From contig NC_091288.1 of the NCBI RefSeq assembly GCF_032444005.1, forward strand, positions 224,006,001 through 224,070,000: DNA of 64,000 nucleotides, in the 5' to 3' direction. The notes under the pieces are model-generated. The model did no database searches. It was not told the origin of the DNA and saw only the letters and a program-made list of their open reading frames with translations. Within the stretch, counting starts at the first letter, position 1. Each line of letters starts with the position of its first letter. This DNA is from Ranitomeya imitator (taxonomy: Eukaryota). Of this stretch, positions 3,350 through 27,496 are shown piece by piece. Both the position numbers and the translations under genes were made by a program.

Positions 3350-6300
3350 TGTTATGAAAGGCAATTCAGTTCCACAATGGACATAGCGGTCAGAGCACAT
3401 ACAGTGATCTGACAATAACCCAAAATCATAGAACGAGCTCTGAGACGTGGGAACTCTGCAGACCGCAATCCCTAATCCTCTCCAAACAACACTAGAGGCA
3501 GCCGTGGATTGTGCCTAACTCTGCCTATGCAACTCGGCACAGCCTGAGAAACTAACTAGCCTGAAGATAGAAAATAAGCCTACCTTGCCTCAGAGAAATA
3601 CCCCAAAGGAAAAGGCAGCCCCCCCACATATAATGACTGTGAGTTACGATGAAAAGACAAACGTAGAGATGAAATAGATTCAGCAAAGTGAGGCCCGACT
3701 TTCTTAACAGAGCGAGGATAGGAAAGGTAACTTTGCGGTCTACACAAAACCCTAAAGAAAACCACGCAAAGGGGGCAAAAAGACCCTCCGTACCGAACTA
3801 ACGGCACGGAGGTACACCCTTTGCGTCCCATAGCTTCCAGCAAAACAATTAGACAAGCTGGACAGAAAAAATAGCAAACAAATAGCAAAGAAGAACTTAG
3901 CTATGCAGAGCAGCAGGCCACAGGAATGATCCAGGGAAAAACAAGTCCAACACTGGAACATTGACAGGAAGCCAGGATCAAAGCATTAGGTGGAGTTAAG
4001 TAGAGAAGCACCTAACGACCTCACCACATCACCTGAGGGAGGAAACTCAGAAGCCGCAGTACCTCTTTCCTCCACCAACGGAAGCTCACAGAGAGAATCA
4101 GCCGAAGTACCACTTGTGACCACAGGAGGGAGCTCTGCAACAGAATTCACAACAGTACCCCCCCCTTGAGGAGGGGTCACCGAACCCTCACCAGAGCCCC
4201 CAGGCCGACCAGGATGAGCCACATGAAAGGCACGAACAAGATCGGGAGCATGGACATCAGAGGCAAAAACCCAGGAATTATCTTCCTGAGCATAACCCTT
4301 CCATTTAACCAGATACTGGAGTTTCCGTCTTGAAACACGAGAATCCAAAATCTTCTCCACAATATACTCCAACTCCCCCTCCACCAAAACCAGGGCAGGA
4401 GGGTCAACAGATGGAACCATAGGTGCCACGTATCTCCGCAACAATGACCTATGGAATACGTTATGTATGGAAAAAGAATCTGGAAGGGTCAGACGAAAAG
4501 ACACAGGATTAAGAACCTCAGAAATCCTATACGGACCAATGAAACGAGGTTTAAACTTAGGAGAGGAAACCTTCATAGGAATATGACGAGAAGATAACCA
4601 AACCAGATCCCCAACACGAAGTCGGGGACCCACACGGCGTCTGCGATTAGCGAAACGTTGAGCCTTCTCCTGGGACAAGGTCAAATTGTCCACTACATGA
4701 GTCCAAATCTGCTGCAACCTGTCCACCACAGTATCCACACCAGGACAGTCCGAAGACTCAACCTGTCCTGAAGAGAAACGAGGATGGAACCCAGAATTGC
4801 AGAAAAATGGCGAAACCAAAGTAGCCGAGCTGGCCAGATTATTAAGGGCGAACTCAGCCAAAGGCAAAAAGGACACCCAGTCATCCTGATCAGCAGAAAC
4901 AAAGCATCTCAGATATGTTTCCAAGGTCTGATTGGTTCGTTCGGTCTGGCCATTAGTCTGAGGATGGAAAGCCGAGGAAAAAGACAAGTCAATGCCCATC
5001 CTACCACAAAAGGCTCGCCAAAACCTCGAAACAAACTGGGAACCTCTGTCAGAAACGATATTCTCTGGAATGCCATGTAAACGAACCACATGCTGGAAGA
5101 ACAATGGCACCAAATCAGAGGAGGAAGGCAATTTAGACAAGGGTACCAGATGGACCATCTTAGAAAAGCGATCACAGACCACCCAAATGACTGACATCTT
5201 TTGAGAAACGGGAAGATCTGAAATAAAATCCATAGAGATATGTGTCCAAGGCCTCTTCGGGACCGTCAAGGGCAAAAGCAACCCACTGGCACGAGAACAG
5301 CAGGGCTTAGCCCGAGCACAAATCCCACAGGACTGCACAAAAGCACGCACATCCCGCGACAGAGATGGCCACCAAAAGGATCTAGCCACTAACTCTCTGG
5401 TACCAAAGATTCCAGGATGACCAGCCAACACCGAACAATGAACCTCAGAGATAACTTTATTCGTCCACCTATCAGGGACAAACAGTTTCTCCGCTGGACA
5501 ACGATCAGGTTTATTAGCCTGAAATTTTTGCAGCACCCGCCGCAAATCAGGGGAGATGGCAGACACAATTACTCCCTCTTTGAGGATACCCGCCGGCTCA
5601 GATACACCCGGAGAGTCGGGCACAAAACTCCTAGACAGAGCATCCGCCTTCACATTTTTAGAGCCCGGAAGGTACTAAATCACAAAGTCAAAACGGACAA
5701 AAAACAACCACCAACGAGCTTGTCTAGGATTCAAGCGCTTGGCGGATTCGAGATAAGTCAAGTTCTTATGATCAGTCAAGACCACCACGCGATGCTTAGC
5801 TCCTTCAAGCCAATGACGCCACTCCTCGAATGCCCACTTCATGGCCAGCAACTCTCGGTTGCCCACATCATAATTTCGCTCAGCAGGCGAAAACTTCCTG
5901 GAAAAAAAAGCGCATGGTTTCATCACTGAGCAATCAGAAACTCTCTGCGACAAAACAGCCCCTGCTCCAATCTCAGAAGCATCAACCTCGACCTGGAACG
6001 GAAGCGAAACATCTGGTTGACACAACACAGGGGCAGAAGAAAAGCGACGCTTCAACTCTTGAAAAGCTTCCACAGCAGCAGAAGACCAATTGACCACATC
6101 AGCACCCTTCTTGGTCAAATCGGTCAATGGTTTGGCAATACTAGAAAAATTGCAGATGAAGCGACGATAAAAATTAGCAAAGCCCAGGAATTTTTGCAGA
6201 CTTTTCAGAGATGTCGGCTGAGTCCAATCATGGATGGCTTGGACCTTAACAGGATCCATCTCGATAGTAGAAGGGGAAAAGATGAACCCCAAAAATGAAA

Positions 6301-9156
6301 CCTTCTGCACACCAAAGAGACACTTTGATCCCTTCACAAACAAAGAATTAGCACGCAGGACCTGAAAAACCGTTCTGACCTGCTTCACATGAGACTCCCA
6401 ATCATCCGAGAAGATCAAAATGTCATCCAAGTACACAATCAGAAATTTATCCAGGTACTCTCGGAAGATGTCATGCATAAAGGACTGAAACACTGATGGA
6501 GCATTGGCAAGTCGGAATGGCATCACTAGATACTCAAAATGACCCTCGGGCGTATTAAATGCAGTTTTCCATTCATCGCCTCGCCTGATTCGCACCAGAT
6601 TATACGCACCACGAAGATCTATCTTGGTGAACCAACTAGCCCCCTTAATCCGAGCAAACAAATCAGATAACAATGGCAAGGGGTACTGAAATTTAACCGT
6701 GATCTTATTTAGAAGGCGGTAATCTATACAAGGTCTCAGCGAACCATCCTTCTTGGCTACAAAAAAGAACCCTGCTCCTAATGGCGACGATGACGGGCGA
6801 ATATGCCCCTTCTCCAGGGATTCCTTCACATAACTGCGCATAGCGGTGTGCTCAGGCACGGACAAATTAAACAATCGACCTTTTGGGAATTTACTACCAG
6901 GAATCAAATTGATAGCACAATCACAATCCCTATGCGGAGGTAGGGTATCGGACTTGGGCTCATCAAATACATCCCGGTAATCAGACAAGAACTCTGGAAC
7001 CTCAGAAGGGGTGGATGACGAAATTGACAGAAATGGAACATCACCATGTACCCCCTGACAACCCCAGCTGGACACCAACATGGAATTCCAATCCAATACT
7101 GGATTATGGGCTTGTAGCCATGGCAACCCCAACACGACCACATCATGCAGATTATGCAACACCAGAAAGCGAATAACCTCCTGATGAGCAGGAGCCATGC
7201 ACATGGTCAGCTGGGTCCAGTATTGAGGCTTATTCTTGGCCAAAGGCGTAGCATCAATTCCTCTCAATGGAATAGGACACTGCAAGGGCTCCAAGAAAAA
7301 CCCACAACGCTTAGCATATTCCAAGTCCATCAAATTCAGGGCAGCGCCTGAATCCACAAATGCCATGACAGAATACGATGACAAAGAGCAGATCAAGGTA
7401 ACGGACAGAAGAAATTTTGACTGTACCGTACCAATGGTGGCAGACCTAGCAAACCGCTTAGTGCGCTTAGGACAATCAGAGATAGCATGAGTGGAATCAC
7501 CACAGTAGAAACACAGCCCATTCAGACGTCTATGTTCTTGCCGTTCAACTCTGGTCAAAGTCCTATCGCACTGCATAGGCTCAGGTTTAAGCTCAGGTAA
7601 TGCAGCCAAATGATGCACAGATTTACGCTCACGCAAGCGTCGACCGATCTGAATGGCCAAAGACATAGACTCATTCAAACCAGCAGGCATAGGAAATCCC
7701 ACCATGACATCCTTAAGGGCTTCAGAGAGACCCTTTCTGAACATAGCTGCCAGCGCAGATTCATTCCATTGAGTGAGCACGGACCACTTTCTAAATTTCT
7801 GACAATATACCTCTATCTCATCCTGAGCCTGACAAAGAGCCAGCAAATTTTTTTTCTGCCTGATCCACTGAATTAGGCTCATCGTACAGCAATCCAAGCA
7901 CCAGGAAAAACGCATCGATATTACTTAATGCAGGATCTCCTGACGCAAGAGAAAATGCCCAGTCCTGAGGGTCGCCACGCAAAAAAGAAATGACGATCCT
8001 AACTGGTTGAACTGGGTCACCAGAGGAGCGAGGTTTCAAAGCCAGAAATAGTTTACAATTATTTTTGAAACTCAGAAATTTAGTTCTATCTCCAAAAAAC
8101 AAATCTGGAATAGGAATTCTCGGTTCTAACAAAGAATTCTGAACCACAAAATCTTGAATATTTTGAACTCTTGCCGTGAGCTGATCCACACATGAAGACA
8201 GACCTTTAATGTCCATTGCTACACCTGTGTCCTGAACCACCCAAATGTCTAGGGGGAAAAAAAGGCAAAACACAGTGCAAAGAAAAAAAAATGGTCTCAG
8301 AACTTCTTTTTTCCCTCTATTGAGAATCATTAGCACTTTTGGCTTCCTGTACTGTTATGAAAGGCAATTCAGTTCCATAATGGACATAGCGGTCAGAGCA
8401 CATACAGTGATCTGACAATAACCCAAAATCATAGAACGAGCTCTGAGACGTGGGAACTCTGCAGACCGCAATCCCTAATCCTCTCCAAACAACACTAGAG
8501 GCAGCCGTGGATTGTGCCTAACTCTGCCTATGCCACTCGGCACAGCCTGAGAAACTAACTAGCCTGAAGATAGAAAATAAGCCTACCTTGCCTCAGAGAA
8601 ATACCCCAAAGGAAAAGGCAGCCCCCCACATATAATGACTGTGAGTTAAGATGAAAAGACAAACGTAGAGATGAAATAGATTCAGCAAAGTGAGGCCCGA
8701 CTTTCTTAACAGAGCGAGGATAGGAAAGGTAACTTTGCGGTCTACACAAAACCCTAAAGAAAACCACGCAAAGGGGGCAAAAAGACCCTCCGTACCGAAC
8801 TAACGGCACGGAGGTACACCCTTTGCGTCCCATAGCTTCCAGCAAAACAATTAGACAAGCTGGACAGAAAAAATAGCAAACAAATAGCAAAGAAGAACTT
8901 AGCTATGCAGAGCAGCAGGCCACAGGAATGATCCAGGGAAAAACAAGTCCAATACTGGAACATTGACAGGAAGCCAGGATCAAAGCATTAGGTGGAGTTA
9001 AGTAGAGAAGCACCTAACGACCTCACCACATCACCTGAGGGAGGAAACTCAGAAGCCGCAGTACCACTTTCCTCCACCAATGGAAGCTCACAGAGAGAAT
9101 CAGCCGAAGTACCACTTGTGACCACAGGAGGGAGCTCTGCCACAGAATTCACAACA
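3350..9156 (-). mobile_element. Full-length Ty3/Gypsy chromovirus (Tf1/sushi-like) LTR retrotransposon
   Basis: LTRs 3350-4154 and 8353-9156 (TGTT...AACA, about 99% identical by eye). PPT GGGGGGGT-AC next to the 3' LTR. TSD GAAAGG at 3344-3349 and 9157-9162. Domain order gag-PR-RT-RH-IN-chromodomain. Confidence 0.97.
3986..8216 (-). pseudogene. Gag-pol polyprotein of the chromovirus, with two lesions
   Basis: Gag starts MDIKGLSS (8216). Motifs: zinc knuckle CFYCGDSTHAISDC, protease FVDSGA, RT YLDD, RNase H VDAS, integrase HHCC plus SMDF/SDRG/TERT, chromodomain YIVEKILDSR..YLVKWKGY. Lesions: +1 frameshift in an A8 run (plus-strand T8, 7848-7855) and an in-frame TAG at 5675-5677 (FDFVI*YLPGSKNVKADALSR). 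Confidence 0.93.
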
Positions 9157-9993: not shown

Positions 9994-11421
9994 ATGTCCT
10001 ACTTCTCCTGCCTGGTAAGATGTGGTCCTATCCATTCTTCCCATATTCCCCATCACATGGAGTTTGTGTCCAGACTACGGTGGTCACCATTACTCATCCA
10101 TATGCTGGCCTTCTCTCCTCAGGTCTCTGTCTTCTGCTTCCCTTTTGCTTGTTTGGGGGTCCTTTTACGTTACTCGGTATCAGTATTGGTGTCTCTGGTA
10201 AGGATGAAGTGTAACATTTATTCATTATTATTATTATTACCGCCATTATATCTGCGTCTCTCCATCCTACACAGATTTGTGGCTCCTTTTTCTCCCCTCG
10301 TGTTGTTGGGATTTTCTCACGCTCTGCCACGGTTGACTACGAGTGGCTGATGATGGCCTTGAAATCCCCCATGTTTACTGGTCTTGTGGCAGAGCCCCGG
10401 CCCGTGTACATCTCCAACAGGGACGAGTGTCACTTCCGAGAGGCCGTCCAAGACTGTGACTTTGTCATTCTATATCACACCAAGAACCGTGGGAGGATCA
10501 ACATCATCAACGTGACGGACTCCTTATACGATGAGGAGCTGACATACATGGCTTCTTCTAAAGGTAAAGTCTGGTGATGGCTGCGATTGTTCCCACGGTC
10601 ACTGGGTGGTGGCAATGATTGTACCCTGAGATCTACAAGCTCCAGCTCTGATCGAGATATCTTCCTGATGATTTCAGGTCTATTGGAAATAATCGGAACA
10701 TTTATTTTACTTTAAGGCAGGGACAATGTGATTGTTTTGGTGGATGACCTGGAGAAGAGCGACTACCAAGAGAAGCGCCGTATTCTGGATGGTCAGCCCG
10801 ATATCACAATCTACTCCCGAGACCTGATACTGGTCACTGGCAACGAGAAGCGGCACCCACATCTACTGGACCAAAAGCTGCAGGACATCAAGGCCAACAT
10901 CTCTGCTGGTAAATGGTCATTCCTGAGGATCTGGCAGGTTGTAGACGGTGAAGTATTGCCGCATGTTAGTACCATGGGGCTCCAGGCTGGAGAAACCTTT
11001 AGGGTAAATTTCAGAATAAGTGCATCAATCTCTGACTCGTCTTTGTCTCCTACAGGGTCTTGGACTACAGTGAATTTGTGGAATTATTTGGTAAGAAAAT
11101 CATCTGCAAGGTCTGGAGTTAAAATAAGTCTCTGTAAATCCTGCATTTTATCTAACCCCGTCTCTTCTGTGTTGGAAGTTTTTGCTTGTTTCGGCCCCAG
11201 GATGATTCTCTTTTATCTCTGCCGTTGACCCAAAGTACAACCAGACGTGTATGTAAGACGCGCTGACAAGTTTCCATCTCAGGGTCGCACAGGCCGAGGG
11301 GTTTCATTATATTCCCAGTGAAGCAGGTTCCTCCAGGTGTGTGCTGCCGCCTCTGTAGGTGTCGCCCTCTATAGATGCCATCGTAAGACCACACGTTCAT
11401 GTCCTCGAAGGGGACCAATAA
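9994..11421 (+). CDS. Predicted 240-aa orphan protein with hydrophobic N-terminus and TIR-like domain; coding exons 9994-10014, 10123-10197, 10275-10563, 10717-10908, 11056-11090, 11201-11248, 11359-11421
   Basis: All six introns are GT..AG with compatible phases (0,0,1,1,0,0). Spliced length 723 nt = 240 aa plus stop, with no internal stops. AATAAA near 11505. The two core exons give VVGIFSRS..DYEWLMMAL..PRPVYISN..FREAVQDCDFVILYHTKNRGRINIINVTDSLYDEELTYM..GRDNVIVLVDD..DLILVT. The small terminal exons are less certain than the core. Confidence 0.7.
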
Positions 11422-11687
11422 ATCCTTGGTAACGCCATGCCCTCTTCAACATTTCCTAGAACACTGTCATTATTTGTTCTACGTGGTGAACACTGCAAAA
11501 ACACAAATAAATAAAAAAAGAAATTGCCATTTGTGTTCATCTCCCCTCACAAAGAAACAAAGTTGTACAAATTCTAAAATGGCTCCAATTAATATTACAG
11601 CTCGTTACTCAAGGTACAAGCCCTCTGATCGCTCTGGAAATGCAACACGGAAAAAGTACAGAATGTGAACGAAAAAAAATATATATA

Positions 11688-13292
11688 CAGTGGGGCAAAA
11701 AAGTATTTAGTCAGTCAGCAATAGTGCAAGTTCTACCACTTAAAAAGATGAGAGGCGTCTGTAATTTACATCATAGGTAGACCTCAACTATGGGAGACAA
11801 ACTGAGAAAAAAAAATCCAGAAAATCACATTGTCTGTTTTTTAACATTTTATTTGCATATTATAGTGGAAAATAAGTATTTGGTCAGAAACAAACAATCA
11901 AGATTTCTGGCTCTCACAGACCTGTAACTTCTTCTTTAAGAGTCTCCTCTTTCCTCCACTAATTACTTGTAGTAATGGCACCTGTTTAAACTTGTTATCA
12001 GTATAAAAAGACACCTGTGCACACCCTCAAACAGTCTGACTCCAAACTCCATTATGGTGAAGACCAAAGAGCTGTCAAAGGACACCAGAAACAAAATTGT
12101 AGCCCTGCACCAGGCTGGGAAGACTGAATCTGCAATAGCCAACCAGCTTGGAGTGAAGAAATCAACAGTGGGAGCAATAATTAGAAAATGGAAGACATAC
12201 AAGACCACTGATAATCTCCCTCGATCTGGGGCTCCACGCAAAATCCCACCCCATGGGGTCAGAATGATCACAAGAACGGTGAGCAAAAATCCCAGAACCA
12301 CGCGGGGGGACCTAGTGAATGAACTGCAGAGAGCTGGGACCAATGTAACAAGGCCTACCATAAGTAACACACTACGCCACCATGAACTCAGGTCCTGCAG
12401 TGCCAGACGTGTCCCACTGCTTAAGCCAGTACATGTCCGGGCCCGTCTGAAGTTTGCTAGAGAGCATTTGGATGATCCAGAGGAGTTTTGGGAGAATGTC
12501 CTATGGTCTGATGAAACCAAACTGGAACTGTTTGGTAGAAACACAACTTGTCGTGTTTGGAGGAAAAAGAATACTGAGTTGCATCCATCAAACACCATAC
12601 CTACTGTAAAGCATGGTGGTGGAAACATCATGCTTTGGGGCAGTTTCTCTGCAAAGGGGCCAGGATGACTGATCCGGGTACATGAAAGAATGAATGGGGC
12701 CATGTATCGTGAGATTTTGAGTGCAAACCTCCTTCCATCAGCAAGGGCATTGAAGATGAAACGTGGCTGGGTCTTTCAACATGACAATGATCCAAAGCAC
12801 ACCGCCAGGGCAACGAAGGAGTGGCTTCGTAAGAAGCATTTCAAGGTCCTGGAGTGGCCTAGCCAGTCTCCAGATCTCAACCCTATAGAAAACCTTTGGA
12901 GGGAGTTGAAAGTCCGTGTTGCCAAGCGAAAAGCCAAAAACATCACTGCTCTAGAGGAGATCTGCATGGAGGAGTGGGCCAACATACCAACAACAGTGTG
13001 TGGCAACCTTGTGAAGACTTACAGAAAACGTTTGACCTCTGTCATTGCCAACAAAGGATATATTACAAAGTATTGAGATGAAATTTTGTTTCTGACCAAA
13101 TACTTATTTTCCACCATAATATGCAAATAAAATGTTAAAAAAACAGACAATGTGATTTTCTGGATTTTTTTTTCTCAGTTTGTTTCCCATAGTTGAGGTC
13201 TACCTATGATGTAAATTACAGACGCCTCTCATCTTTTTAAGTGGTGGAACTTGCACTATTGCTGACTGACTAAATACTTTTTTGCCCCACTG
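11688..13292 (+). mobile_element. Tc1-family DNA transposon, full length (1605 bp), with long TIRs
   Basis: CAGTGGGGCAAAAAAGTATTTAGTC...GACTAAATACTTTTTTGCCCCACTG termini; TIRs about 210 bp; TA on both flanks (11686-87, 13293-94). Confidence 0.97.
12054..13076 (+). pseudogene. Tc1 DD34E transposase with one in-frame TGA
   Basis: Paired-like HTH N-terminus, GRPR-like SGAPRK, WSDETK / QHDNDPKH / NPIENLW with 34 residues between the second D and E. TGA at 12666-12668 ([13 protein letters not shown]), probably CGA>TGA. Confidence 0.93.
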
Positions 13293-14394
13293 TATATTAT
13301 AGAGAAAAAGCTGTAAATGTGTGTTTAACAAAGTATAATTCATGTTATTAGCAAAATATACAAAATCGATAGCGGAATTTCTGGGTTTTACTCATCCAAC
13401 CTTATATAAGATGAAATCAAAAGTCGTTTGTATTAAAACAATGGCACCAATGACACCACGGCTGAAAACGGGCCCTCACCCGGCTCTACCCACATAAAAA
13501 CGCAGAATGTGACGGACTCAGAATATTATGACATTATTAATATAACATTATTTTTTGTGTAAAAGTAGTAATTCATAAGGTTTTATTTTCTTACTGACCT
13601 GCAGAATAAGGTCAATTCATCAATTCAATTGCAGTGTGAACAGTGCGTAAAAAAAAAAATCAAAATTATTTTTACATTCCATCCCCAAAAAATGTAATAA
13701 AAGTGATCAACCAGAAAAGAGCAACAGTGAAAACTACGTCTTGTCCTGCAAAAATGAATCCCCTGTGTATCTGAATGATGGAACGTTGTAAACCGGAGGA
13801 CGGTGACAGAAACGGTTGTTGTTTCTTTACAGAGTATTTATGGTACAAAAGTGATGAGACCTGAATGTGGTGCCGCCATAATCCCACGGACCCTCATAAT
13901 GAAGGAAACACCACAGGAAAAGCAGAAAGTTTAAAATCTAAAAAAAAATGTTTGTTTTTTTTTCAAATTTTCCGTATAAGCATCAAATAAAAGTTTTGCC
14001 GCTGACAAATACAGCTCGTCCCAGGATAAAGAGACGTCAATACAGCGACATTGGCTAAGAAAAGTCCTAGTGGACCAAAATGGGCCCGACATTGAGGAGT
14101 TAAAGGGTCGCTCCACTACTTTTGTATTAATACCCTACCCTAAGGCCATCCTCAGAGCAGTGCCGCCAGACGGATTTCAGCAGCTGCAGAGCTGAACACT
14201 ACAGATCTGAATACTCTGTGGTTGGTGGTGGCCACTGCTGGGTGCTGCTGACCCACTGCTCTTCTTTCACATGGGACAGATGTGCGGCCTCCGTGCCCCG
14301 GCCCGGCAGCTCCAGGATTCTATCACTAACACTTTCAGGTTTGGCTTACACGTAGCCTCTATCCCTGTTTCCTGCCGTCTCAGGGTCCCCACTA

Positions 14395-15507
14395 CCCCAC
14401 AGTTACCTTCTGCACCTCTGGCCTCGTACCACTGACGTTATCTCCTGTCTCGCTGTTCTGGACCTCTGGACTAGCCATCCTTATTCCAGATCCACCGTCA
14501 CGTACCTGACTCTATTACAGACTTGCTATCTCTGTCCTTCCTTCCCTCACCTAGGTGGTCTGGTCTCTTCACTCCGAGTCCTCACTTCTCTCCCTTTCGC
14601 ACTCTGACCAGCACTTATGGAGGAACTTCTTCTGCTCCTCTGGCCTCGTACCACTGACGTTATCTCCTGTCTCGCTGTTCTGGACCTCTGGACTAGCCAT
14701 CCTTATTCCAGATCCACCATCACGTACCAGACTCTATTACAGACTTGCTATCTCTGTCCTTCCTTCCCTCACCTAGGCGGTCTGGTCTCCTCACTCCAAG
14801 TCCTCACTTCTCTCCCTTTCGCACTCTGACCAGCACTTATGGAGGAACCTCTCCTGCTCCTCTGGCCTCGTACCACTGACGTTATCTCCTGTCTCGCTGT
14901 TCTGGACCTCTGGACTAGCCATCCTTATTCCAGATCCACTGTCATGTACCTGACTCTATTACAGACTTGCTATCTCTGTCCTTCCTTCCCTCACCTAGGC
15001 GGTCTGGTCTCTTCACTCCGAGTCCTCACTTCTCTCCCTTTCGCACTCTGACCAGCACTTATGGAGGAACCTCTTCTGCACCTCTGGCCTCGTACCACTG
15101 ACGTTATCTCCTGTCTCGCTGTTCTGGACCTCTGGACTAGCCATCCTTATTCCAGATCCACCGTCACGTATCAGACTCTATTACAGACTTGCTATCTCTG
15201 TCCTTCCTTCCCTCACCTAGGTGGTCTGGTCTCTTCACTCCGAGTCCTCACTTCTCTCCCTTTCGCACTCTGACCAGCACTTATGGAGGAACCTCTTCTG
15301 CACCTCTGGCCTCGTACCACTGACGTTATCTCCTGTCTCGCTGTTCTGGACCTCTGGACTAGCCATCCTTATTCCAGATCCACCGTCACGTATCAGACTC
15401 TATTACAGACTTGCTATCTCTGTCCTTCCTTCCCTCACCTAGGCGGTCTGGTCTCTTCACTCCGAGTCCTCACTTCTCTCCCTATCGCACTCTGACCAGC
15501 ACTTATG
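14395..15507. repeat. 222-bp tandem repeat, about 5 copies
   Basis: Identical landmarks at 14617, 14839, 15061 and 15283 (period exactly 222); the plus strand is pyrimidine-rich. Confidence 0.93.
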
Positions 15508-16378
15508 GAGAAAGGTCTTCTGCTCGTCTTGCCAGGGCTGGCTAGCTGTTAACCATTCCCTGGCTATGTGTCAGCAGTGTTCTCTCTCTCTAGAATTGTC
15601 CCATCTCTTGAATACAGGACAATGTCCATTCTGCAGGGAGTACTGGTGATCTCATAGACCTTTCACATGGGTATGACCGACCGTAAGGGAAAATGTCACC
15701 TGCTTCAGCAGCATGAATCGAAGCCCGGCTGTATGACCGCATCCAGAAACGTCACTTTCAAATGCTCCGATGTCAGAGAAGATACAGTTGTAGAGCTTCT
15801 CCGAGCTTCTAACAGGTCTCTTGCTAAGTGGACACATGGAAGTATACATGGTGGCAGCCGGGCTGCGGTTGTGGTGCCTGAGTCTTTGTCAGCATTGATT
15901 GACAGTTTCCCATTAAGGAACGGGACGTAGATGTGACAATGACCCTCCGCCATCTCTGACCTCTCCACCTGCTCTAGATGCCAAGTCTAACTGAATTTCT
16001 GCTTTCCAGGAATCTTTGGCTGTTTGGGTCCATAATAATGTGAGTTACATGGTGATATTGCCTGAGATGGTTCTTCTGTGTCTTTCTCTGTCTTCTCCTC
16101 TGTTCCTCCTCTGTGGCTCTCCTGGCTCCTCTGTGGTGAGTCCTCTGTGTCTCCTGTGCAGCTTACTATCACTGTGCTATATGATTACTACACCGTTACT
16201 TTTCCAGCTCGTTTTGTCCAGTATTATTTGTGTTACATTGTGTTTCCTTTTTACAGATCTCTGCAGTTTGCTCATCTACGGCAGTGGTAAGAAATCATCA
16301 TTACCAACTTGTGATCTTAAATCACACCGTTACATATGGGGAACTACACCGTGTCGGATCACACACCAGACTGTTACA

Positions 16379-18152
16379 CAGCAGGTGAAATAAGTATTGA
16401 AAAAGTGACAAATTCTCTAGCTAAATCTGCTTCTAAAGGTGATATTGACATGAAATTATCTCCAGATATCGGTAACAACCGATCAAATCCACACGGGAAA
16501 GAAATCACGGAAAATGTCTATAAATTAAGTTATGGGTAATAATGGGAAATGACACAGCAAAAAAGCATTGAACTGGCTTACTGAAATTTATTTAATAGTT
16601 CATACAAGTATGTTGGTGATGCAGCTTCAAGATGCCTCTTGCATGGAGAAACTAGTTGCAGGCATTGCTCAGGTGTGATTTTGGCCTAGTCTTTCACATA
16701 AAAACATCTTCACATCCAGAAGCTTCCTTGGCTCCTTCTATGAACTCAGAGCTTTAGTCCCTTCCATACATTTTCTCTTGGATTCCAGTCCGGTGATCGG
16801 TTCGGCCTTTGTAGCAGCTTTATTTTCTTTCTGTGAGACCAATTCAGAGTTTCCTTAGCTGTGGGTTTGTGATCATTGTCTTGTGAAACATTCACCCTTG
16901 TTTCATCTTCATCACCCTGGTAGATGGTCTCAGTACATTTGTCTATTCATCCTTCCTTCACTGAAATAAAGTTTGTCAGCCCCACACCATGATGTTCCCA
17001 CCTCCAGACTTTACTGTTGGTATGGTGTTTTTGAGGTGATGTTCAGTGCCTTTTGACCTCCAAGTATGTGAATTATGGCATCCAAAAAGTACAATTTTGG
17101 TCTCATGTGGCCAGACTATATTCTCCCAGTATTTCACGGACTTGTCTAAATGTTGTTGAACAAACTGTAAACGTGCTTGAACATGCTTTTTACTTAGCAA
17201 TGGAGTCTTGTGTGGTGAGCGTGCATACAGGCCATGGAGGTTGCGTGGTGAGAGTGCATACAGGCCATGGAGGGTGAGTGCATTACTTACAGTTTTCTGT
17301 GAAACAATTGTACCTGTTGATTCCAGGTGTTTCTATGGCTCTCCACAGGTGTCCTTGGCTTTTGGACAACTCTTCTGATAATTCTTGCAGTCCTCTTTCT
17401 GAAATCTTGCGAGGAGCACCTGGTCGTAGTTGGTTTATGGTGAAATTTTGCAGAAAGCCCCTGTTTATGGTCGGTTTATGGTGAAATCTTCTGGGGAACA
17501 CCTGGTTGTGGCTGGTTTATGGTGAAACCTTGCCCGTAGTAGCTGCTCGTGGTTGGTTTATGGTGAAATCTTGCGAGGAGCACTTGGTCATGGCTGGTTT
17601 ATGGTGAAATCTTGTAGGGAGCACCTGGTCATTTCTGGTTTATGGTGAAGTCTTGCGGGGAGCACCTGGTCATGGCCGATTTATGGTGAAATTATGTTCC
17701 TTGCACTTCTGGATTATGGCCGCAGTTTATAAATTCTTCTATAACCAATGCCATAAGTTTATTTTGCAACAGTAATGTTGTGAAGGTCTTGAGACAGCTC
17801 AATGGATTTCCCATCATGAGCTGTTTCTTGTGTGGCCCACTGGTAATAAGACTCCATTTATAGTCATCAGGTGAGCCAGCAGATGTAATTTTTCTCTAAG
17901 TGGAAGGATTGCTTTCTAATTACTGATAGATTTCATCAGGTGACAGGACTTTTTAGGGCTTTTTGCTCCTCTTTTTCTTCTTCTAGTGTTCAATATGTTT
18001 CCCTGTGTCACTTCCCATTATTACACATAATATATGGACATCTATAGTGATTTCTTTGCCTCTGTGGATTGGATGGGTTGTGACCGACATCCTGTGAGAA
18101 TTTCATGGCAATAGCAGCTTTAGAAAACTGGTGGCATGTTCAATACTTATTT
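16379..18152 (-). mobile_element. Degenerate Tc1 transposon with an internal ~39-bp tandem expansion (about 17410-17700)
   Basis: TIR-like CAGCAGGTGAAATAAGTATTGAA at the left and TTCAATACTTATTT at the right. The minus-strand ORF gives HVQARLQFVQQHL..YWENIVWPHETK..NTIPTVKSGGGNIMVWG. Confidence 0.8.
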
Positions 18153-18896
18153 GTATATGGGGGGATTGTAGTGTGTGGGGTCACACACGTTCCATAGTAA
18201 TAAGGTTACACGTCTGGGTCTCGGATCCATCGAGCAGTTCTTTGTTCTTTCTTCCAGTGCAGCCAATAATCATCATAATTCATCTCTCTAAAGTCGGGTA
18301 TACTAAGACAAATATGGAGGTCAGGCCCAGACCGGAGAACATTGCTCTTCATGTCTTGGCTCAGTTTACTATCGAGAACTTTTCTTCAAGACAAAATGTC
18401 TAAAATCTTTCTTCTTTGTAGCCTTACAGAAGAAGAGGACCAGGCGAGCTGGATGAGGTAACGGATAGTATAGTGGAATAACGTGATCAGAAATGGCGAC
18501 ATCTGGGGCCGGAAATGTCAGACGTAAGGAAAGTGCGAGCACGCCATAAACATATACATCAAAATTTAGATCAAATGTTTACATTCAGCGAGTCGCTCAG
18601 TCTCCTCCGGGATGGCAGAGGAGGATAACATTTGGCATCTTTACAACCTCTCAGTCCCCTTGACAAGTGATAAAGCCTCTGTAATCTCCTCGCTTTGGGA
18701 CCCCGGCTCCAGGTTCTGCTGCTCCGTAGTGTAGACCTTGCAGGGACGTTACATGACCGCGGCAGCCATGAGAAGCGCCATGATTTCTGACATCACTGAC
18801 AAATCATTCATGTGATGACATCACACATGACGTATCACTCTGCCGGAGCAGAACCTGGAGTAGGCGAGGCTCCGCTCACTGCCTCCAACATGTCCC

Positions 18897-19552
18897 TGTC
18901 ACGCCGTAAGCGGCGTTAAAGGTGCAGGATGGCGTACTGGGACCCGCACCTGTCCCTACTACTTTAATGGGGCCCTGGCTTTCCCTTATCTCGGGGGTAC
19001 CTATGATGGTTAAGAGGCCCGAGCCGCCAGCGTATCCCTGTCTCCTGTGCAGGCCCTATCAGTGGCCCCCTCTCCTCCCCAGGGAGGAGGACTGCACCAG
19101 TGTATAAACACAACAATAAACAGGGTATACAGACAAAGTAACTAAAAGTCTCAAACTCACCGAATGCTCACACGACCACAGAGGGTACACATAGAAGGGA
19201 AGAGAAGGAGAAAACTGTGAAGGAAAACAGGTTTAACAAACAACCAAAACAGCAGACACCAATCTCCAAACTCCTAATATCACTCTCCTTCAACCTCCAA
19301 GCCAGGCAGCAGAACTGATCACTGACACTAGCTGTAGTCAAGGCTGGGTCTATATAGAGGAGAAGATTACAAAATCCACTTCAGCTGAGAGACCCAGCTC
19401 ACAGCAACTTAGCAAATAAAGTTAACTCCTGCACTGCTGGCACAAAGCAGCCAGGTCAGAATACAGGTGAAGAGCTTCTGTTCACTGTGTGTGAACGAGG
19501 CCCAGAGCGCTGCGGTTCTCTGGAACCTCTCTGTCGCCGTAGCCCCATGACA
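18897..19552. mobile_element. Solo LTR, 656 bp
   Basis: TGTCA...TGACA termini; 5-bp TSD GTCCC at 18892-18896 and 19553-19557. Confidence 0.85.
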
Positions 19553-19921
19553 GTCCCCTCCTCATAGTGTACATGATGCAGGCGCCGCTATAATCTGCTT
19601 AACAAAGAGTCCAAATATGCTAAAAAATATAAAGATTTTATTCGTATTACAAAAAACACAGAAAAATATATGAACAATGTAAAATTTAAAAAGGTAACAA
19701 TGCAAAATAAGCTCAGCTATGAAAAGGATCCGTAATAGGCATCCATGTCATCTGATACTCCTATATTCAGTATATAGCAAAGGAGAAAATATTCCAATGA
19801 AAGAACAGTGGAACATAAAGTATCACTGAGTATGCTGCATGCCATAAATGTAATAGAAAAAGGGACAGTTAATGACAAGAGGAATCACCCATAGTTCGTG
19901 TAGATCCTGACAAGACCACAG

Positions 19922-19973
19922 CCACGTTCCTCGATGCATATTTGGCATTGTTACCGCTTCCTCAGGGGCGTGG
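19922..19973 (-). ncRNA. Decayed type I hammerhead ribozyme motif (Penelope-like tail)
   Basis: Minus strand CCACGCCC-CTGAGGA-AGCGGTAACAATGCC-AAAT-ATGCAT-C-GAGGAACGTGG. CTGANGA is intact; the GAAA box, stem II and stem I are eroded. Confidence 0.4.
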
Positions 19974-22513
19974 CTTAAGTGTGGCAGCTGTCCAGTATAA
20001 AGGTCACATGACCGGCCAGCAACCTATCAAATATTTTATTTATGCACACGCGCCCATCCTGGACCTCAAACCCCTCCCATCCCCTCCTCCGCCCACGTCA
20101 CAGTCACGAGAGACGGCCGGCGCCAGGCCGCACATCAAACATCTAACATGCTAAAGAAGTCAAATGTGCTCCATTATACTCTTGTACCAGTGCCAATAAA
20201 AATTTATTCTCAAATAATATCATCTAGTTTTCTTTGGTCTTTCAGCCGTTACTTGCCTGACCCAGAGCGGATCTTCTTGGCCCGGTTCTGTCACCTCGTC
20301 TCGTCACATCCTTCTTATGGCTCGCCCCAGCTGTCGGCCCTGAGGACTCAGGAATCCCGGAATATATTGATGAAGGATATATGTCCAACGTTGGAAAGAG
20401 AAACATAAAAATCCATAAGAATGTGACGCATCTCGCCGACCGGATGAGGTTACATCTCATCACTCAATGGAAGATTCTGTCCAACAGAGAAATCTCCTAT
20501 TCCGTGACGACGCATTGGACTGATACATTGTAACCTCAGAGGAGAGGAGTCGCCCCAATTTCTCCGTCACCCTTCATACAGCCACAATTTCTCTTACTTC
20601 TGGTGACTTTTTATTACTTATGGTTTTATCTCATCATTGATCACATCCACTTGGGGTCATTTGTGGAGTCGATATCAGAGAAGATCATAAGTTTATCTAA
20701 CGTTTAGCGGCAAAGCTTGTGTCTTCTGGGGTCAGAAATGTCTGTTGTCTAAGTTGTGAAGGCTTCTGTATTCTGTATTTGAATGAATGAAGATGGGGAT
20801 TATCTCATGTAGCTTCACCTGTTATCTCCTGATACAATTAATTAATAAAACATTCTGTAGTCACTTGGTGATGTCTGACCTTTAGTTACGAGAGCCTCTT
20901 CACACAGTGTAATATTTTAGGACTTTTCCACCATTGCAGCCTCTAATCTCCTGCAGAGAAGACGGCCACCAATGACGGGAGGATAATCATCTCGTGAGTC
21001 CAGAAGGCCAATAATTTCTTCCCGTATTGATTCCACAAATGGTCTATATGGAAATCTCTTCTATATCACCCGTCTTTCTGTGTAGTGAGTCTTGGATACC
21101 AAACACGAGACCCTCGTGCCTATCTATGCCTCACTTCACCATGCATCCCCGATATTCTAGGGTCTGATGGTGTTATTGCATGGGTTTGGTTCATGAGGGT
21201 CTGTAGACATATGACCTAGATGTCAGTGAGCTTCTAATAATGGAGATGTTATAGAGTAATAGTAGTCCTGACGACAGCCGACTACTGAAGATGGGACAAT
21301 GATCCATTGACTCATTCTGATTGGTAGATTTGGAGACATGAAGGAATTTGTGTCCTAATGTGGGGGTCATGAGGGATCAACACCGCAGGGGCATGGGCCA
21401 ACCCATAGATAGTTCCATACCTTTGGTTTGTGTAATTGTAGTGGGTAAGTCTACACTTCAGCCTTACAGTACTAATGATATTTTTTATGTTGTTGGCAAC
21501 TGTTTAGTAGCTTGGATCTTTGGGGTCCAGGTCGTGAGCCCCCTACAGATTGCTCAATAGAAGCAGAAGCTCTCGGTGTATTCTCCAATAGGAGCAGAGC
21601 CGGGCACAGACCCACAACCAAGTCTGGCTCATGCTCATCCTCGATATAAGCCAAGCGTTTCTGCCTTTGCCTTCATTAGACTGATGGGAGCGCAGGACTT
21701 GGACCCACTAACCATATGATGTTTGCCACCGATCAACGTTTTTATACAATTCTGTGCATTTATACTCGTACATTACAGCAGGCAAGGAGTCCAGGGATCC
21801 ATAATAGACTTTGTCTTCTCACATCTGGGTCATAGCCCAGCAGAAGGCATCACATAAATTAAGATAAGGAAACAGCGCTGGTGACATCTTTCTGTCTGGT
21901 TTTGGGCCCTCGGCTTCACCCAGGGAAAAGTATTGGGACTTGTGCCCTCTGAGGCCCCGTCTCTCTGTTTTAGCGGGACTCATGTTTATCCCACAGGGTA
22001 AATAGCAGATAATCATCTTATATCAGTTACATGGAAGGTGAAGAGCTGCATGGAAATCAGGTGCAAATTCTGCCATATAGACTAATGTTTTAAGCATCCT
22101 GACCACAAAAACAAATGAGTGAATCCCTTGCCCCTTCACTACTGCCCAGATCTTTGGATCATGTCTTTTTGGATCTGTCAGTACCTCTGCATGAACTTTC
22201 TGGAGCAGTGTTCTGTTGCTGCTGGTCCTGGACTCAGTTATTGATCAGACTTATTGGATGTGGCCTTGATTTGAATGATGTATTGGGTTAGTTCATAAAT
22301 GCAAATACGCGTAGACCGAAGCTGTTGACACAACGGAGTTCCACTATGTGCTCGGGTTTTGCATGTTGCCATGAATTCTGGACTTTCAGTCTTTGCTCAT
22401 ATATTCAGGTCTCAGAAGTAATTTCTGGAGAACATTTTACGTTCAGTCTCGGATTGATGACAATTGTGCATGAATCCAGCTGGCCAATCCGTATAAACTA
22501 GGAAAAGACTTGA

Positions 22514-22547: not shown

Positions 22548-22658
22548 CCAGGACAAGAATTGGCTCCTGAGGGCTTCATTGACCATCATCTACTCCTTGT
22601 GAAAGTGTAGATGTCTTCACCTTCTTCTTTATAGGTGATCCTCTGTATTGGGATAGCC

Positions 22659-26825: not shown

Positions 26826-27496
26826 ATCTTCAGAATCACTTGTTCTGCTGGTTCCATGATCCGTACATTTGTTGGATTCAAGCTTGGCTGGCTGGATTGT
26901 GAACCATTCTCAGCCTTCTTTAGTGGTTTCTTCTAAGAGATGATCTCAAGGACAACCTCTGCTACTCTCCAACTTATTGCCCCTCTCTAGAATAGTCCTG
27001 AATCCCACCCTTCACAAATCTGGTGAATTGCCTTGTTTTGCACATCTTTATTAAAGACTCTAAAGATTATATTTTGTGACAAAGGTTTTTTCATAATTTT
27101 TATTTAATGAAGGACAATGAAAAATGTTATGCATATCAGGACGATTAGTTAAAAAAATGGATGGAAGGTGAGTGGTGTTTAAGGATTTCTGATACCTAGA
27201 GGTCAAGACCATGACTTGCGTGTGATGATCACATTTACAGCCAGCTATGCAAAGTCTGAAAGAAATTCAATACATCCATAGTTTCCATACAAGAAAGGCT
27301 ATGCTAGACCATAAAAAGAAGAAATACTCGTGCAGCTGGATGGAGATGTGAGAAAGGTCTCTGATCATTTCCTTGGGGACAAGGGGCAAATATGTGACAC
27401 GATACTCTGCCACCTGAAAACTGGATATTGAACACATTATCCAACAGAAGCAGTGAAGGTTGTAGATCTGAAGGTCAGAGGCGTCTTCTCCAAGTC

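What the first reader, a model, noticed from the sequence alone, without database searches (positions are those of the whole stretch)
9994..11421. Orphan multi-exon gene encoding a TIR-like domain with a putative catalytic glutamate and an N-terminal membrane anchor
Seen in sequence: seven small exons join in phase through GT-AG introns into a 240-aa ORF that the ORF track shows only in fragments. The core has alternating beta/alpha units: VVGIFS / DYEWLMMAL / PVYIS / FREAVQDC / FVILYH / LYDEELTYM / NVIVLVDD / LILVT. Established: TIR domains follow betaA FISY, alphaB xxEAIxxS, betaC xIVVLS, alphaC WCxxEL, betaD xVIPIF, and the alphaC Glu is catalytic in SARM1, plant and bacterial TIR NADases. 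Inference: SLYDEEL places Glu120 (codon 10536-10538) at that position. The first ~40 residues are hydrophobic and Cys-rich, suggesting a membrane anchor. The protein has no LRR, Ig, death or SAM domain, so it does not fit the TLR, IL-1R, MyD88 or SARM1 architectures. It may be a lineage-specific membrane-tethered TIR-type NAD+ hydrolase or signalling protein.
Basis: partly seen in the sequence, partly recalled or inferred. Interest (0 to 1): 0.85.

Follow-up and report, generated by a model that had tools for sequence, protein, structure and literature searches.

The report
Frog-specific membrane-anchored TIR-like domain gene
This is a real, spliced poison-frog gene for a small membrane-anchored protein; it is not an orphan but one of several hundred uncharacterised frog proteins whose shared domain folds most like a TIR immune-signalling domain, and whether it is a true TIR enzyme remains unproven.

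Summary
The gene is real. The true 3' exons lie at 16010-16039, 16257-16286, 18422-18457 and 20246-20260. That gives nine coding exons and 240 aa, 90% identical to a Dendrobates tinctorius protein.

'Orphan' is wrong. The ~155-aa domain defines a family of at least 460 clusters at 50% identity. Every hit whose source names an organism is a frog, none has an assigned function, and no member matches a Pfam model.

AlphaFold models (pLDDT 90 and 96) show five beta-alpha units. The top Foldseek hit for both models is the TIR domain of TIR-STING, but scores are marginal (E 2e-4 to 1e-3, TM 0.5-0.6) and mixed with CheY, flavodoxin and GTPase hits. No TIR model matches any member, and hhalign against a bacterial TIR profile gives 0.2%.

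Glu120 is kept in 90% of 357 domain copies but is Gln in four orthologues. Ser47, His100 and Asp138 are better conserved.

The N-terminal hydrophobic anchor is confirmed. A conserved C-terminal DxxLL motif suggests endosomal sorting.

Verdict: new domain family, TIR-like fold, mechanism open.

The parts
9994..10014 (+). Coding exon 1 (M1-L7). The exon's acceptor is at 9971/9972, so longer upstream-initiated isoforms can read through 'SSGTVVI' into this ATG.
   Evidence: Orthologues P0002 and P0004 start with the same MS[YF]FSCL.
10123..10197 (+). Coding exon 2 (V8-L32), the hydrophobic anchor exon. An in-frame alternative donor lies after 10176. The exon is skipped in some annotated isoforms (P0001, P0003).
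   Evidence: P0005 uses the shorter form '...LRYS|ICGS'.
10275..10563 (+). Coding exon 3 (I33 to the first base of G129): betaA through alphaC of the domain.
   Evidence: Family HMM E 9e-44. Orthologous cDNA L001 168-449 aligns to 10274-10564.
10717..10908 (+). Coding exon 4 (rest of G129 to the first base of G193): betaD through alphaE.
   Evidence: Family HMM E 6e-22. 100% identical to R. imitator protein P0001. cDNA L001 446-641 aligns here.
11056..11090 (+). Coding exon 5 (G193-L204, 'GSWTTVNLWNYL').
   Evidence: cDNA L001 640-678 aligns to 11055-11093.
11091..16009 (+). Intron 5.
16010..16039 (+). Coding exon 6 (E205-N214, 'ESLAVWVHNN').
   Evidence: tblastn of P0002 and P0004. AG/GT borders.
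16257..16286 (+). Coding exon 7 (I215-V224).
   Evidence: P0001 reads this same exon in another frame after skipping exons 5-6.
18422..18457 (+). Coding exon 8 (P225-E236, 'PYRRRGPGELDE').
20246..20260 (+). Coding exon 9 (P237-A240 plus stop). With exon 8 it forms the conserved C-terminal ...ELDEPLLA, a DxxLL-type acidic dileucine.
   Evidence: Unique pattern match. cDNA L001 770-806 aligns to 20244-20280. The tail is conserved in orthologues.
10003..10286 (+). Hydrophobic, Cys-rich membrane anchor, residues 4-36 (split over exons 1-3). The most hydrophobic 19-mer is residues 4-22. Arg23 and Arg41 lie on the C-terminal side.
   Evidence: The same feature occurs in 24 of 163 single-domain family members.
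10299..10907 (+). Family domain, residues 41-192 (interrupted by intron 3): five beta-alpha units, flavodoxin-like, TIR-like.
   Evidence: AF2 pLDDT 90.2. Foldseek.
10476..10538 (+). Most conserved stretch: His100 at the end of betaC, the KNRGRxN[IT]x[ND]VTDS loop, and the start of alphaC with Tyr117, Asp118 and Glu120 (codon 10536-10538).
10317..10319 (+). Ser47 codon (end of betaA), kept as Ser or Thr in 99.7% of 357 domain copies.
10743..10748 (+). Asp138-Asp139 codons (end of betaD), conserved at 98.9% and 94%.

Best explanation
Gene and family (shown). Positions 9994-20260 on the + strand hold an intact nine-exon gene for a 240-aa protein in a dendrobatid frog, with a 100% match to Ranitomeya imitator. 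It is the orthologue of 'uncharacterized LOC' genes found across frogs. It belongs to a large frog-restricted multigene family built on a ~155-aa domain that has no Pfam model.

Fold (shown). The domain has a five-stranded alpha/beta/alpha flavodoxin-like fold, and its best structural neighbours are TIR domains. A cluster of near-invariant polar residues sits at the C-terminal ends of betaA, betaC and betaD and on the betaC-alphaC loop and alphaC: Ser47, His100, Gly105/Arg106/Asn108, Tyr117/Asp118/Glu120 and Asp138/Asp139.

Topology (inferred). Residues 4-22 form a membrane anchor with the N-terminus outside, and the domain faces the cytosol. Arg23 and Arg41 follow the anchor. Forty-seven of 163 single-domain relatives in the sample carry the hydrophobic segment C-terminal to the domain, and the three whose ends I read are tail-anchored. 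The conserved extreme C-terminal DxxLL motif would need cytosolic adaptors and would direct TGN/endosome sorting.

Mechanism (inferred). The conserved pocket binds and probably cleaves a small nucleotide-type ligand. The leading specific model is a TIR or N-deoxyribosyltransferase-like N-glycosidase, such as an NAD+ hydrolase, using the alphaC acid Glu120. The family's expansion, tandem arrays and occasional fusion to an interferon-induced GTPase would fit an innate-immunity role.
For: Gene model. Orthologues and family: 460 representatives at E<=1e-3, 342 at E<=1e-30; every hit whose source names an organism is anuran. Transcription: 1-2 kb Logan contigs each carrying the complete ORF of the P0007 orthologue cluster, and a X. 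laevis cDNA clone, MGC115316. Fold: pLDDT 90.2 and 95.6. Foldseek top hit for both models is TIR-STING 9lmq_D; BCAP cryptic TIR, SfSTING, SIGIRR TIR and RPPT-TIR are also in the lists, together with MilB/BcmB N-glycosidases and viral N-deoxyribosyltransferases. One member carries the UniRef name 'TIR domain-containing protein'. Residue conservation and co-occurring losses. Anchor. Fusion with interferon-induced very large GTPase 1 in Bombina.
Against: No sequence-level link to TIR was found. Pfam, PADLOC and NCBIfam give no TIR model hit in the members scanned (36 against Pfam, 150 against each of the others). A profile search of PDB sequences finds no TIR. hhalign against an 80-sequence TcpC-like TIR profile gives 0.2%. 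The family profile pulled only 460 proteins from 1.84 billion, so it does not recognise ordinary TIRs. Foldseek E-values are marginal (2e-4 to 1e-3), TM-scores are 0.4-0.6, and the hits are interleaved with CheY, flavodoxin, dehydroquinase and GTPase folds. The BB loop is only 4-5 residues long. The aromatic-to-Glu spacing is +3 rather than the +4 of W-x-x-x-E. Glu120 is Gln in four close orthologues and is less conserved than Ser47, His100 and Asp138. Topology, sorting and immune role are inferences. The fusion models may be gene-prediction artefacts.
Confidence: 0.45

Rival explanations
1. A hydrolase or ligand-binding enzyme of the flavodoxin-like fold that is not a TIR. The near-universal Ser47 (end of betaA), His100 (end of betaC) and Asp138 (end of betaD) sit on what should be neighbouring strands (order 2-1-3-4-5). 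They could form a Ser-His-Asp-type catalytic centre or a phosphate/metal site, with Glu120 only accessory.
For: Ser47 is conserved at 99.7%, Asp138 at 98.9% and His100 at 96%, against Glu120 at 90%. Glu120 is replaced by Gln in four orthologues while Ser, His and Asp stay. Foldseek hits span many flavodoxin-like enzyme superfamilies. No TIR sequence signal was found.
Against: No SGNH hydrolase, amidotransferase or other triad hydrolase appears in the top 50 Foldseek hits. There is no nucleophile-elbow motif around Ser47. TIR remains the top structural hit in both models.
Confidence: 0.2
2. A non-catalytic TIR-like adaptor: a membrane-tethered scaffold that signals by homotypic or heterotypic domain assembly, as TRAM, TIRAP and BCAP do, without enzymatic turnover.
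For: BCAP cryptic TIR and SIGIRR TIR are among the structural neighbours. Many family proteins carry 2-6 tandem domains. Membrane tethering is recurrent. The Glu120-to-Gln change is tolerated in some orthologues.
Against: The most conserved residues are a dense polar and charged cluster at the classical ligand site of the fold. That pattern is typical of catalysis or small-ligand binding rather than of protein interfaces. No BB loop of the kind used by animal TIR adaptors is present.
Confidence: 0.2
3. A type II membrane or secreted orientation. The N-terminal hydrophobic stretch would act as a signal-anchor that puts the domain in the lumen or outside the cell, where the conserved N-x-T sites (N-I-T and N-V-T) would be glycosylated.
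For: The N-[IV]-T / N-V-T sequons in the conserved loop are widely kept. The N-terminal hydrophobic region has no charged N-flank.
Against: Forty-seven of 163 single-domain relatives have the hydrophobic segment C-terminal to the domain, and the three whose ends I read are tail-anchored, which forces a cytosolic domain. Ninety-two have no hydrophobic segment and no signal peptide. Positive charges follow the anchor. The conserved extreme C-terminal DxxLL makes sense only in the cytosol. In the window protein one of the two sequons is already lost (N-I-I).
Confidence: 0.08
4. Not a functional gene: a chance ORF assembly or a decaying pseudogene copy.
For: R. imitator's own deposited annotation (P0001) differs. 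It skips exons 2, 5 and 6 and starts in an exon that lies antisense inside a gypsy pol ORF.
Against: All nine exons are open and in phase with canonical splice sites. The protein is 90-91% identical to congeneric and confamilial orthologues and 62% identical to Hyla, with all family-invariant residues intact. An orthologous transcript confirms the junctions.
Confidence: 0.02

Closest known systems
TIR domains: bacterial TIR-STING (PDB 9lmq, 7un8), BCAP cryptic TIR (5for), zebrafish SIGIRR TIR (7fcj), plant RPPT-TIR (7xoz)
   Same: Five parallel beta-alpha units of similar size. Top-ranked Foldseek neighbour for two models. A conserved Ser at the end of betaA, a hydrophobic betaC, and an aromatic residue followed by an acidic residue early in alphaC. 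Membrane tethering of a small TIR-only protein recalls TRAM and TIRAP.
   Different: No TIR HMM or profile-profile signal. The BB loop is very short, and the long conserved loop lies between betaC and alphaC instead. The aromatic-to-Glu spacing is +3. Near-invariant His100 and Asp138/Asp139 have no TIR counterpart that I know of. The family is restricted to frogs as far as seen.
N-(deoxy)ribosyltransferase-like N-glycosidases (MilB 4jem, BcmB 4jen, viral NDTs; DNPH1/Rcl recalled from my own knowledge)
   Same: Flavodoxin-like fold with a catalytic Glu on the helix that follows the third strand. These proteins appear in the Foldseek lists. Rcl's 'SL..YEL' stretch resembles 'SLYDEEL', but this is recalled from memory and was not tested.
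   Different: Scores are weaker than for TIR (E 2e-3 to 4e-2). No sequence-level match. No phosphate-binding G-S-I-R-G-G-type loop after beta1.
CheY-like receiver, flavodoxin and other SCOP c.23 superfamilies
   Same: Comparable TM-scores (up to 0.61 normalised by target), which implies the same strand order.
   Different: The receiver signature (acidic pair after beta1, phospho-acceptor Asp after beta3, Thr/Ser after beta4, Lys after beta5) is absent. There is no flavin-binding loop. hhalign against one receiver domain gives 0.2%.
Acidic-cluster dileucine (DxxLL) sorting signals at the extreme C-terminus of membrane cargo, such as mannose-6-phosphate receptors, sortilin and BACE1 (my own knowledge)
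   Same: The protein ends in ...ELDEPLL-A, that is D-x-x-L-L one residue from the C-terminus, and this is conserved in orthologues.
   Different: Adaptor binding has not been tested, and the orientation of the C-terminus is inferred.

Membership tests
TIR domain (Pfam TIR/TIR_2/TIR-like; SCOP c.23.2) | A match to a curated TIR sequence model | tested here: not met
   None of 36 members hits a TIR model in Pfam at E<=1, and none of 150 hits one in PADLOC or NCBIfam. The window exons alone have no Pfam hit. One member carries a UniRef 'TIR domain-containing protein' name whose basis I could not inspect.
TIR domain (Pfam TIR/TIR_2/TIR-like; SCOP c.23.2) | Profile-profile or profile-sequence similarity to known TIRs | tested here: not met
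   hhalign of A3 against an 80-sequence TcpC-like TIR profile gives 0.2% probability, and against single TIRs 0.2-1%. hmmsearch of PDB sequences finds no TIR. The test has limited power because the bacterial TIR profile is narrow (Neff 2.7) and no secondary-structure scoring was used.
TIR domain (Pfam TIR/TIR_2/TIR-like; SCOP c.23.2) | Three-dimensional similarity to solved TIR domains above that to other folds | tested here: inconclusive
   TIR-STING is rank 1 for both models, and the only three hits with E<=1e-3 for model 1 are TIRs. However, TM-scores are 0.43-0.59 and the lists also contain CheY, flavodoxin, EF-Tu and IRGQ at equal or higher TM.
TIR domain (Pfam TIR/TIR_2/TIR-like; SCOP c.23.2) | An extended BB loop between betaB and alphaB | tested here: not met
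   AF2 secondary structure puts only 4-5 residues between betaB (70-77) and alphaB (83-91). The long conserved loop lies between betaC and alphaC.
Enzymatic TIR (NADase) | A conserved catalytic Glu early in alphaC | tested here: inconclusive
   Glu120 is the sixth residue of alphaC (115-128). It is Glu in 32 of 36, 124 of 150 and 322 of 357 sequences but Gln in four close orthologues. Its position relative to the pocket could not be measured.
Enzymatic TIR (NADase) | NAD+ cleavage activity | not testable with these tools
   This needs a biochemical assay.
Unnamed anuran domain family (this report; e.g. X. laevis MGC115316/LOC734410, X. tropicalis LOC100489315) | A significant match to the family profile with the invariant residues present | tested here: met
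   Exon 3 matches at E 9e-44 and exon 4 at E 6e-22. Ser47, His100, Gly105, Arg106, Asn108, Tyr117, Asp118, Glu120, Asp138, Asp139 and Gln155 are all present.
P-loop NTPases (KAP / AAA_16 / Sll1717) | A Walker A loop after beta1 plus a Walker B strand | tested here: not met
   A few members give weak hits (E 0.005-0.06). No G-x4-G-K-[ST] motif is present. Only three residues separate betaA from alphaA. The resemblance probably comes from the 'V-I-V-V-I-D-D-L-D' strand.

The most novel reading that the evidence does not exclude
Frogs have evolved and massively amplified a previously unrecognised, sequence-isolated branch of the TIR/N-glycosidase superfamily. Its members would be mostly membrane-tethered, cytosol-facing nucleotide-cleaving enzymes (NAD+ or signalling nucleotides) that act in innate immunity. 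This would be a vertebrate counterpart of bacterial and plant TIR-only immune enzymes, and the window gene would be its conserved N-terminally anchored, endosome-sorted member.
Probability: 0.2. Interest if true: 0.85.

Novelty: new variant of a known kind. Interest (0 to 1): 0.58.

Why it matters
If the domain is an active TIR/NDT-type enzyme, frogs would carry hundreds of copies of a nucleotide-cleaving immune module. In vertebrates SARM1 is the one well-established TIR enzyme of this type (my own knowledge). That would bear on amphibian defence against chytrid fungus and ranavirus.

Even without that, the result has value. The family has several hundred members from Ascaphus to Xenopus to poison frogs. 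It has no Pfam model, and I found no paper on it in the library searched. It has a confidently predicted fold and a sharply defined conserved pocket, so it is a clean target for structural and biochemical characterisation.

The work also corrects the gene model. The deposited R. imitator annotation is chimeric and starts inside a retroelement.

Tried and rejected
- Pfam on the window exons and on 36 members gave nothing relevant.
- PADLOC and NCBIfam on 150 domain copies gave no TIR model, only scattered chance hits.
- phmmer and hmmsearch against PDB sequences found no TIR. A weak caspase-3 p12 hit (E 0.04) runs gap-free into the His tag and mismatches secondary structure, so I rejected it.
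- I fetched E. coli CFT073 TcpC and a neighbouring TIR protein and built an 80-sequence TIR profile from metagenomes. hhalign gave no signal. A response-regulator receiver used as a control was also null.
- Weak KAP/AAA_16/Sll1717 P-loop hits probably come from the Walker-B-like 'VVIDDLD' strand. I rejected them because there is no Walker A loop.
- Pattern scans for bacterial, archaeal or viral relatives found none.
- A search for paralogues in the window found none.
- Four literature searches found nothing on this family.
- The 'MTEYDDKEQIK' 5' exon of the deposited annotation (7365-7397) lies antisense inside a gypsy pol ORF, so I regard it as spurious.
- I could not hand the spliced 240-aa window protein to the external tools because it has no reference. 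I used the orthologue P0002 and the window-identical P0001:30-185 instead.
- Neighbourhood look-ups: nothing is on record for D. tinctorius P0002. For the Hyla orthologue the look-up returned only the gene span (13.9 kb, no neighbouring genes within 10 kb) and no DNA.
Full report
**1. What is in the sequence**

The window is frog DNA. Exon 4 of the feature is 100% identical to a Ranitomeya imitator protein, P0001.
- 9994-10014
- 10123-10197
- 10275-10563
- 10717-10908
- 11056-11090

Each exon has an AG acceptor preceded by a pyrimidine tract and a GTAAG or GTAAA donor. Together they join in phase to 204 residues.

The Dendrobates tinctorius protein P0002 (240 aa, 'isoform X2') has the same order of segments, including the hydrophobic exon 2 and the 'GSWTTVNLWNYL' exon 5.

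**2. The 3' end is elsewhere**

The conserved C-terminal 36 residues of the orthologues map much further downstream (tblastn; sequence and borders):
- 16010-16039 (ESLAVWVHNN)
- 16257-16286 (ISAVCSSTAV)
- 18422-18457 (PYRRRGPGELDE)
- 20246-20260 (PLLA, stop)

The nine-exon CDS is 723 nt and encodes 240 aa. It is 217/240 identical to D. tinctorius, 219/240 to R. variabilis, 174 identities to Anomaloglossus and 149 to Hyla.

An orthologous transcript contig from a public sequencing run (L001, 1034 nt, complete 233-aa ORF) aligns as contiguous cDNA to exon 3, exon 4, exon 5 and the last exon. This directly supports those junctions. The cluster of that protein holds 23 sequences, all from 1-2 kb contigs.

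Intron 5 (11091-16009) carries a Tc1/Sleeping-Beauty-type transposase remnant.

The deposited R. imitator annotation (P0001) differs from this model:
- It skips exons 2, 5 and 6.
- It reads exon 7 out of frame.
- It starts in a 33-nt exon (7365-7397) that lies antisense inside a Ty3/gypsy pol ORF.

I regard it as a poor model. Exon 2 skipping (P0003) and a 21-nt shorter exon 2 using the donor after 10176 (P0005) also appear in NCBI isoforms of relatives. The hydrophobic anchor may therefore be alternatively spliced.

**3. Not an orphan**

A search with P0002 found 59 proteins, and all those whose source names an organism come from frogs. A profile of 33 domain sequences, scored against 1.84 billion representatives, found 460 proteins at E<=1e-3 and 342 at E<=1e-30. 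The word-indexed search found 337.

Among the 120 best hits listed, every one whose source names an organism is anuran. They run from Ascaphus, Bombina, Discoglossus, Xenopus, Pelobates and Leptobrachium to ranids, hylids, myobatrachids and dendrobatids. All are 'uncharacterized' or 'hypothetical', apart from one UniRef entry named 'TIR domain-containing protein'. One X. laevis member has a cDNA clone, MGC115316.

- No bacterial, archaeal or viral relative was found.
- No paper in the held library mentions these loci.
- The window holds a single copy.
- Only the best hits are listed by the tools, so presence outside Anura is not excluded.

**4. Architecture of the family**

Among the single-domain proteins:
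- 24 have an N-terminal hydrophobic segment. This is the window gene's orthologue group.
- 47 have a hydrophobic segment C-terminal to the domain. The three whose ends I read (P0031, P0043, P0054) are tail-anchored.
- 92 have none.

Some gene models fuse the domain to other modules:
- a kinesin motor in X. laevis, X. tropicalis, Discoglossus and Hyperolius
- interferon-induced very large GTPase 1 in Bombina
- a P2X7 C-terminal domain in Bombina
- Ig domains in Hyperolius

These may be real chimeras or prediction run-ons.

**5. Fold**

AlphaFold2 on the window-identical domain (P0001:30-185, 33-sequence alignment) gave pLDDT 90.2 and pTM 0.87. Confidence was low only in the most conserved loop. 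A second model of a 46%-identical X. tropicalis paralogue, built with a 150-sequence alignment, gave pLDDT 95.6.

| Foldseek search | TIR-related hits | Other hits |
|---|---|---|
| PDB, model 1 | TIR-STING (E 2e-4, 4.7e-4) and BCAP cryptic TIR (3.6e-4) are the only three hits with E<=1e-3. RPPT-TIR follows. | Type II dehydroquinase, CheY-like, flavodoxin, MilB/BcmB, GTPases. TM 0.4-0.62. |
| PDB, model 2 | TIR-STING again first (E 1.3e-3, TM 0.59). BCAP, SfSTING and SIGIRR TIRs follow. | CheY, EF-Tu/eEF1A and flavodoxin, interleaved. |
| BFVD viral library, model 2 | A Cap12/Pycsar-type TIR at rank 4. | N-deoxyribosyltransferases at ranks 13, 37 and 38. All weak. |

Most non-GTPase hits belong to the flavodoxin-like fold (SCOP c.23, strand order 2-1-3-4-5; this classification is from my own knowledge). 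The fold level is therefore solid. The TIR superfamily is the best guess, not a demonstrated assignment.

**6. Sequence-level tests of TIR membership are negative**

- No TIR model in Pfam, PADLOC or NCBIfam hits any member.
- A profile search of all PDB sequences returns no TIR.
- I fetched TcpC and a second TIR protein from E. coli CFT073 and collected 80 TcpC-like TIRs from metagenomes. I then ran hhalign against the 150-sequence family alignment. The probability was 0.2%.
- Single-sequence comparisons were also null, as was a receiver-domain control.
- The TIR profile is narrow, so this test has limited power. Even so, the family profile retrieves only its own 460 members from 1.84 billion proteins. 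The family is sequence-isolated.

**7. Conserved site and Glu120**

I tallied conservation over 357 domain copies.

| Residue | Conserved (%) |
|---|---|
| Ser47 (Ser/Thr) | 99.7 |
| Asp138 | 98.9 |
| His100 | 96 |
| Tyr117 | 96 |
| Trp56 | 95 |
| Gly105 | 95 |
| Asp139 | 94 |
| Lys173 | 94 |
| Gln155 | 92 |
| Asn108 | 91 |
| Glu120 | 90 |
| Arg106 | 88 |
| Asn80 | 84 |
| Asp118 | 82 |

These residues lie at the C-terminal ends of betaA, betaB, betaC and betaD, on the betaC-alphaC loop, and in the first two turns of alphaC. That is the classical ligand site of this fold.

Losses of these residues co-occur several-fold more often than expected. This suggests one functional site that decays as a unit, although shared ancestry inflates such counts.

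Three points count against it as the essential catalytic residue:
- It is Gln in four of the nearest non-dendrobatid orthologues: Hyla, Rhinoderma, Pseudophryne and the transcript cluster.
- It is less conserved than Ser47, His100 and Asp138.
- The Tyr-to-Glu spacing is +3, against +4 in W-x-x-x-E.

The betaB-alphaB (BB) loop, important in animal and enzymatic TIRs, is only 4-5 residues here.

**8. Membrane anchor and sorting**

Residues 4-36 are hydrophobic. The best 19-mer (residues 4-22) scores Kyte-Doolittle 2.35, and the stretch contains Cys6, Cys12, Cys17 and Cys34. This feature is conserved in the orthologue group.

Four observations lead me to infer an N-out, C-in anchor with a cytosolic domain:
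- There is no charged N-flank, while Arg23 and Arg41 follow the hydrophobic stretch.
- Relatives exist whose hydrophobic segment closes the protein, the arrangement of tail-anchored proteins.
- Many relatives are soluble and lack a signal peptide.
- The orthologues share an extreme C-terminal D-x-x-L-L plus one residue (ELDEPLLA here; GLDAPLLV in ranids).

That C-terminal motif has the form of GGA-type TGN/endosome sorting signals. This is from my own knowledge and was not tested.

**9. Interpretation**

The gene, family membership, fold, anchor and conserved pocket are shown. The topology, endosomal sorting, nucleotide-type ligand and immune role are inferred.

The specific TIR-type NADase mechanism is the leading hypothesis but is weakly supported. 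A Ser-His-Asp-centred hydrolase and a non-catalytic TIR-like adaptor are serious rivals.

**10. Context**

Four intact TAS2R bitter-taste receptor ORFs and one truncated one follow the gene on the same strand. Gypsy and copia retroelements flank the region. One Hyperolius family model even includes a TAS2R domain, which hints at a conserved neighbourhood.

Noticed in passing
window 22635-23618, 27428-28411, 30913-31839, 42356-43246 (+), and truncated 55127-55882 (+): A cluster of four intact TAS2R bitter-taste receptor ORFs and one truncated one lies directly downstream of the gene on the same strand. A Hyperolius family-member model (P0039) carries a TAS2R Pfam hit, so the neighbourhood may be conserved.
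   Followed up: partly
window 3986-7915 (-): Ty3/gypsy retroelement pol ORFs (integrase, chromodomain, RT, RNase H). The first exon of the deposited R. imitator annotation of this gene (7365-7397 +, 'MTEYDDKEQIK') lies antisense inside it and is probably spurious.
   Followed up: partly
window 12054-12668 (+) and 61539-62402 (+): Tc1/Sleeping-Beauty-type transposase ORFs. The first sits in intron 5 of the gene. On the opposite strand a 246-aa ORF (11963-12703) overlaps it.
   Followed up: partly
window 49996-53659 (-): A copia-type LTR retroelement (gag, zinc knuckle, integrase, RVT_2) with long open ORFs.
   Followed up: no
window 10909-11055 (intron 4): This 147-nt intron is stop-free and in frame, so the ORF track reads exon 4 through exon 5 and on to 11228 as one 166-aa ORF. 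An AATAAA lies at 11418-11423. Intron retention or an alternative short 3' end is conceivable but has no support.
   Followed up: no
family proteins P0065 (X. laevis), P0067 (X. tropicalis), P0084 (Discoglossus), P0188/P0197 (Hyperolius): Gene models in four distant frog species join an N-terminal kinesin motor (KIF13A-like) to one or more copies of the family domain. These are either a conserved chimeric gene or repeated run-on prediction across a conserved neighbourhood.
   Followed up: partly
family proteins P0130/P0196 (Bombina bombina): Two copies of the domain sit at the N-terminus of an interferon-induced very large GTPase 1 (URGCP domain plus GTPase) model. This is the only hint of an immune link, and it comes from a single species.
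   Followed up: partly
window 44919-45947 (+), three overlapping ORFs of 271-342 aa: This region has strongly skewed composition (GC skew -0.50 over 44001-46000) and long ORFs in all three + frames with no Pfam hit. It is probably a low-complexity repeat.
   Followed up: no
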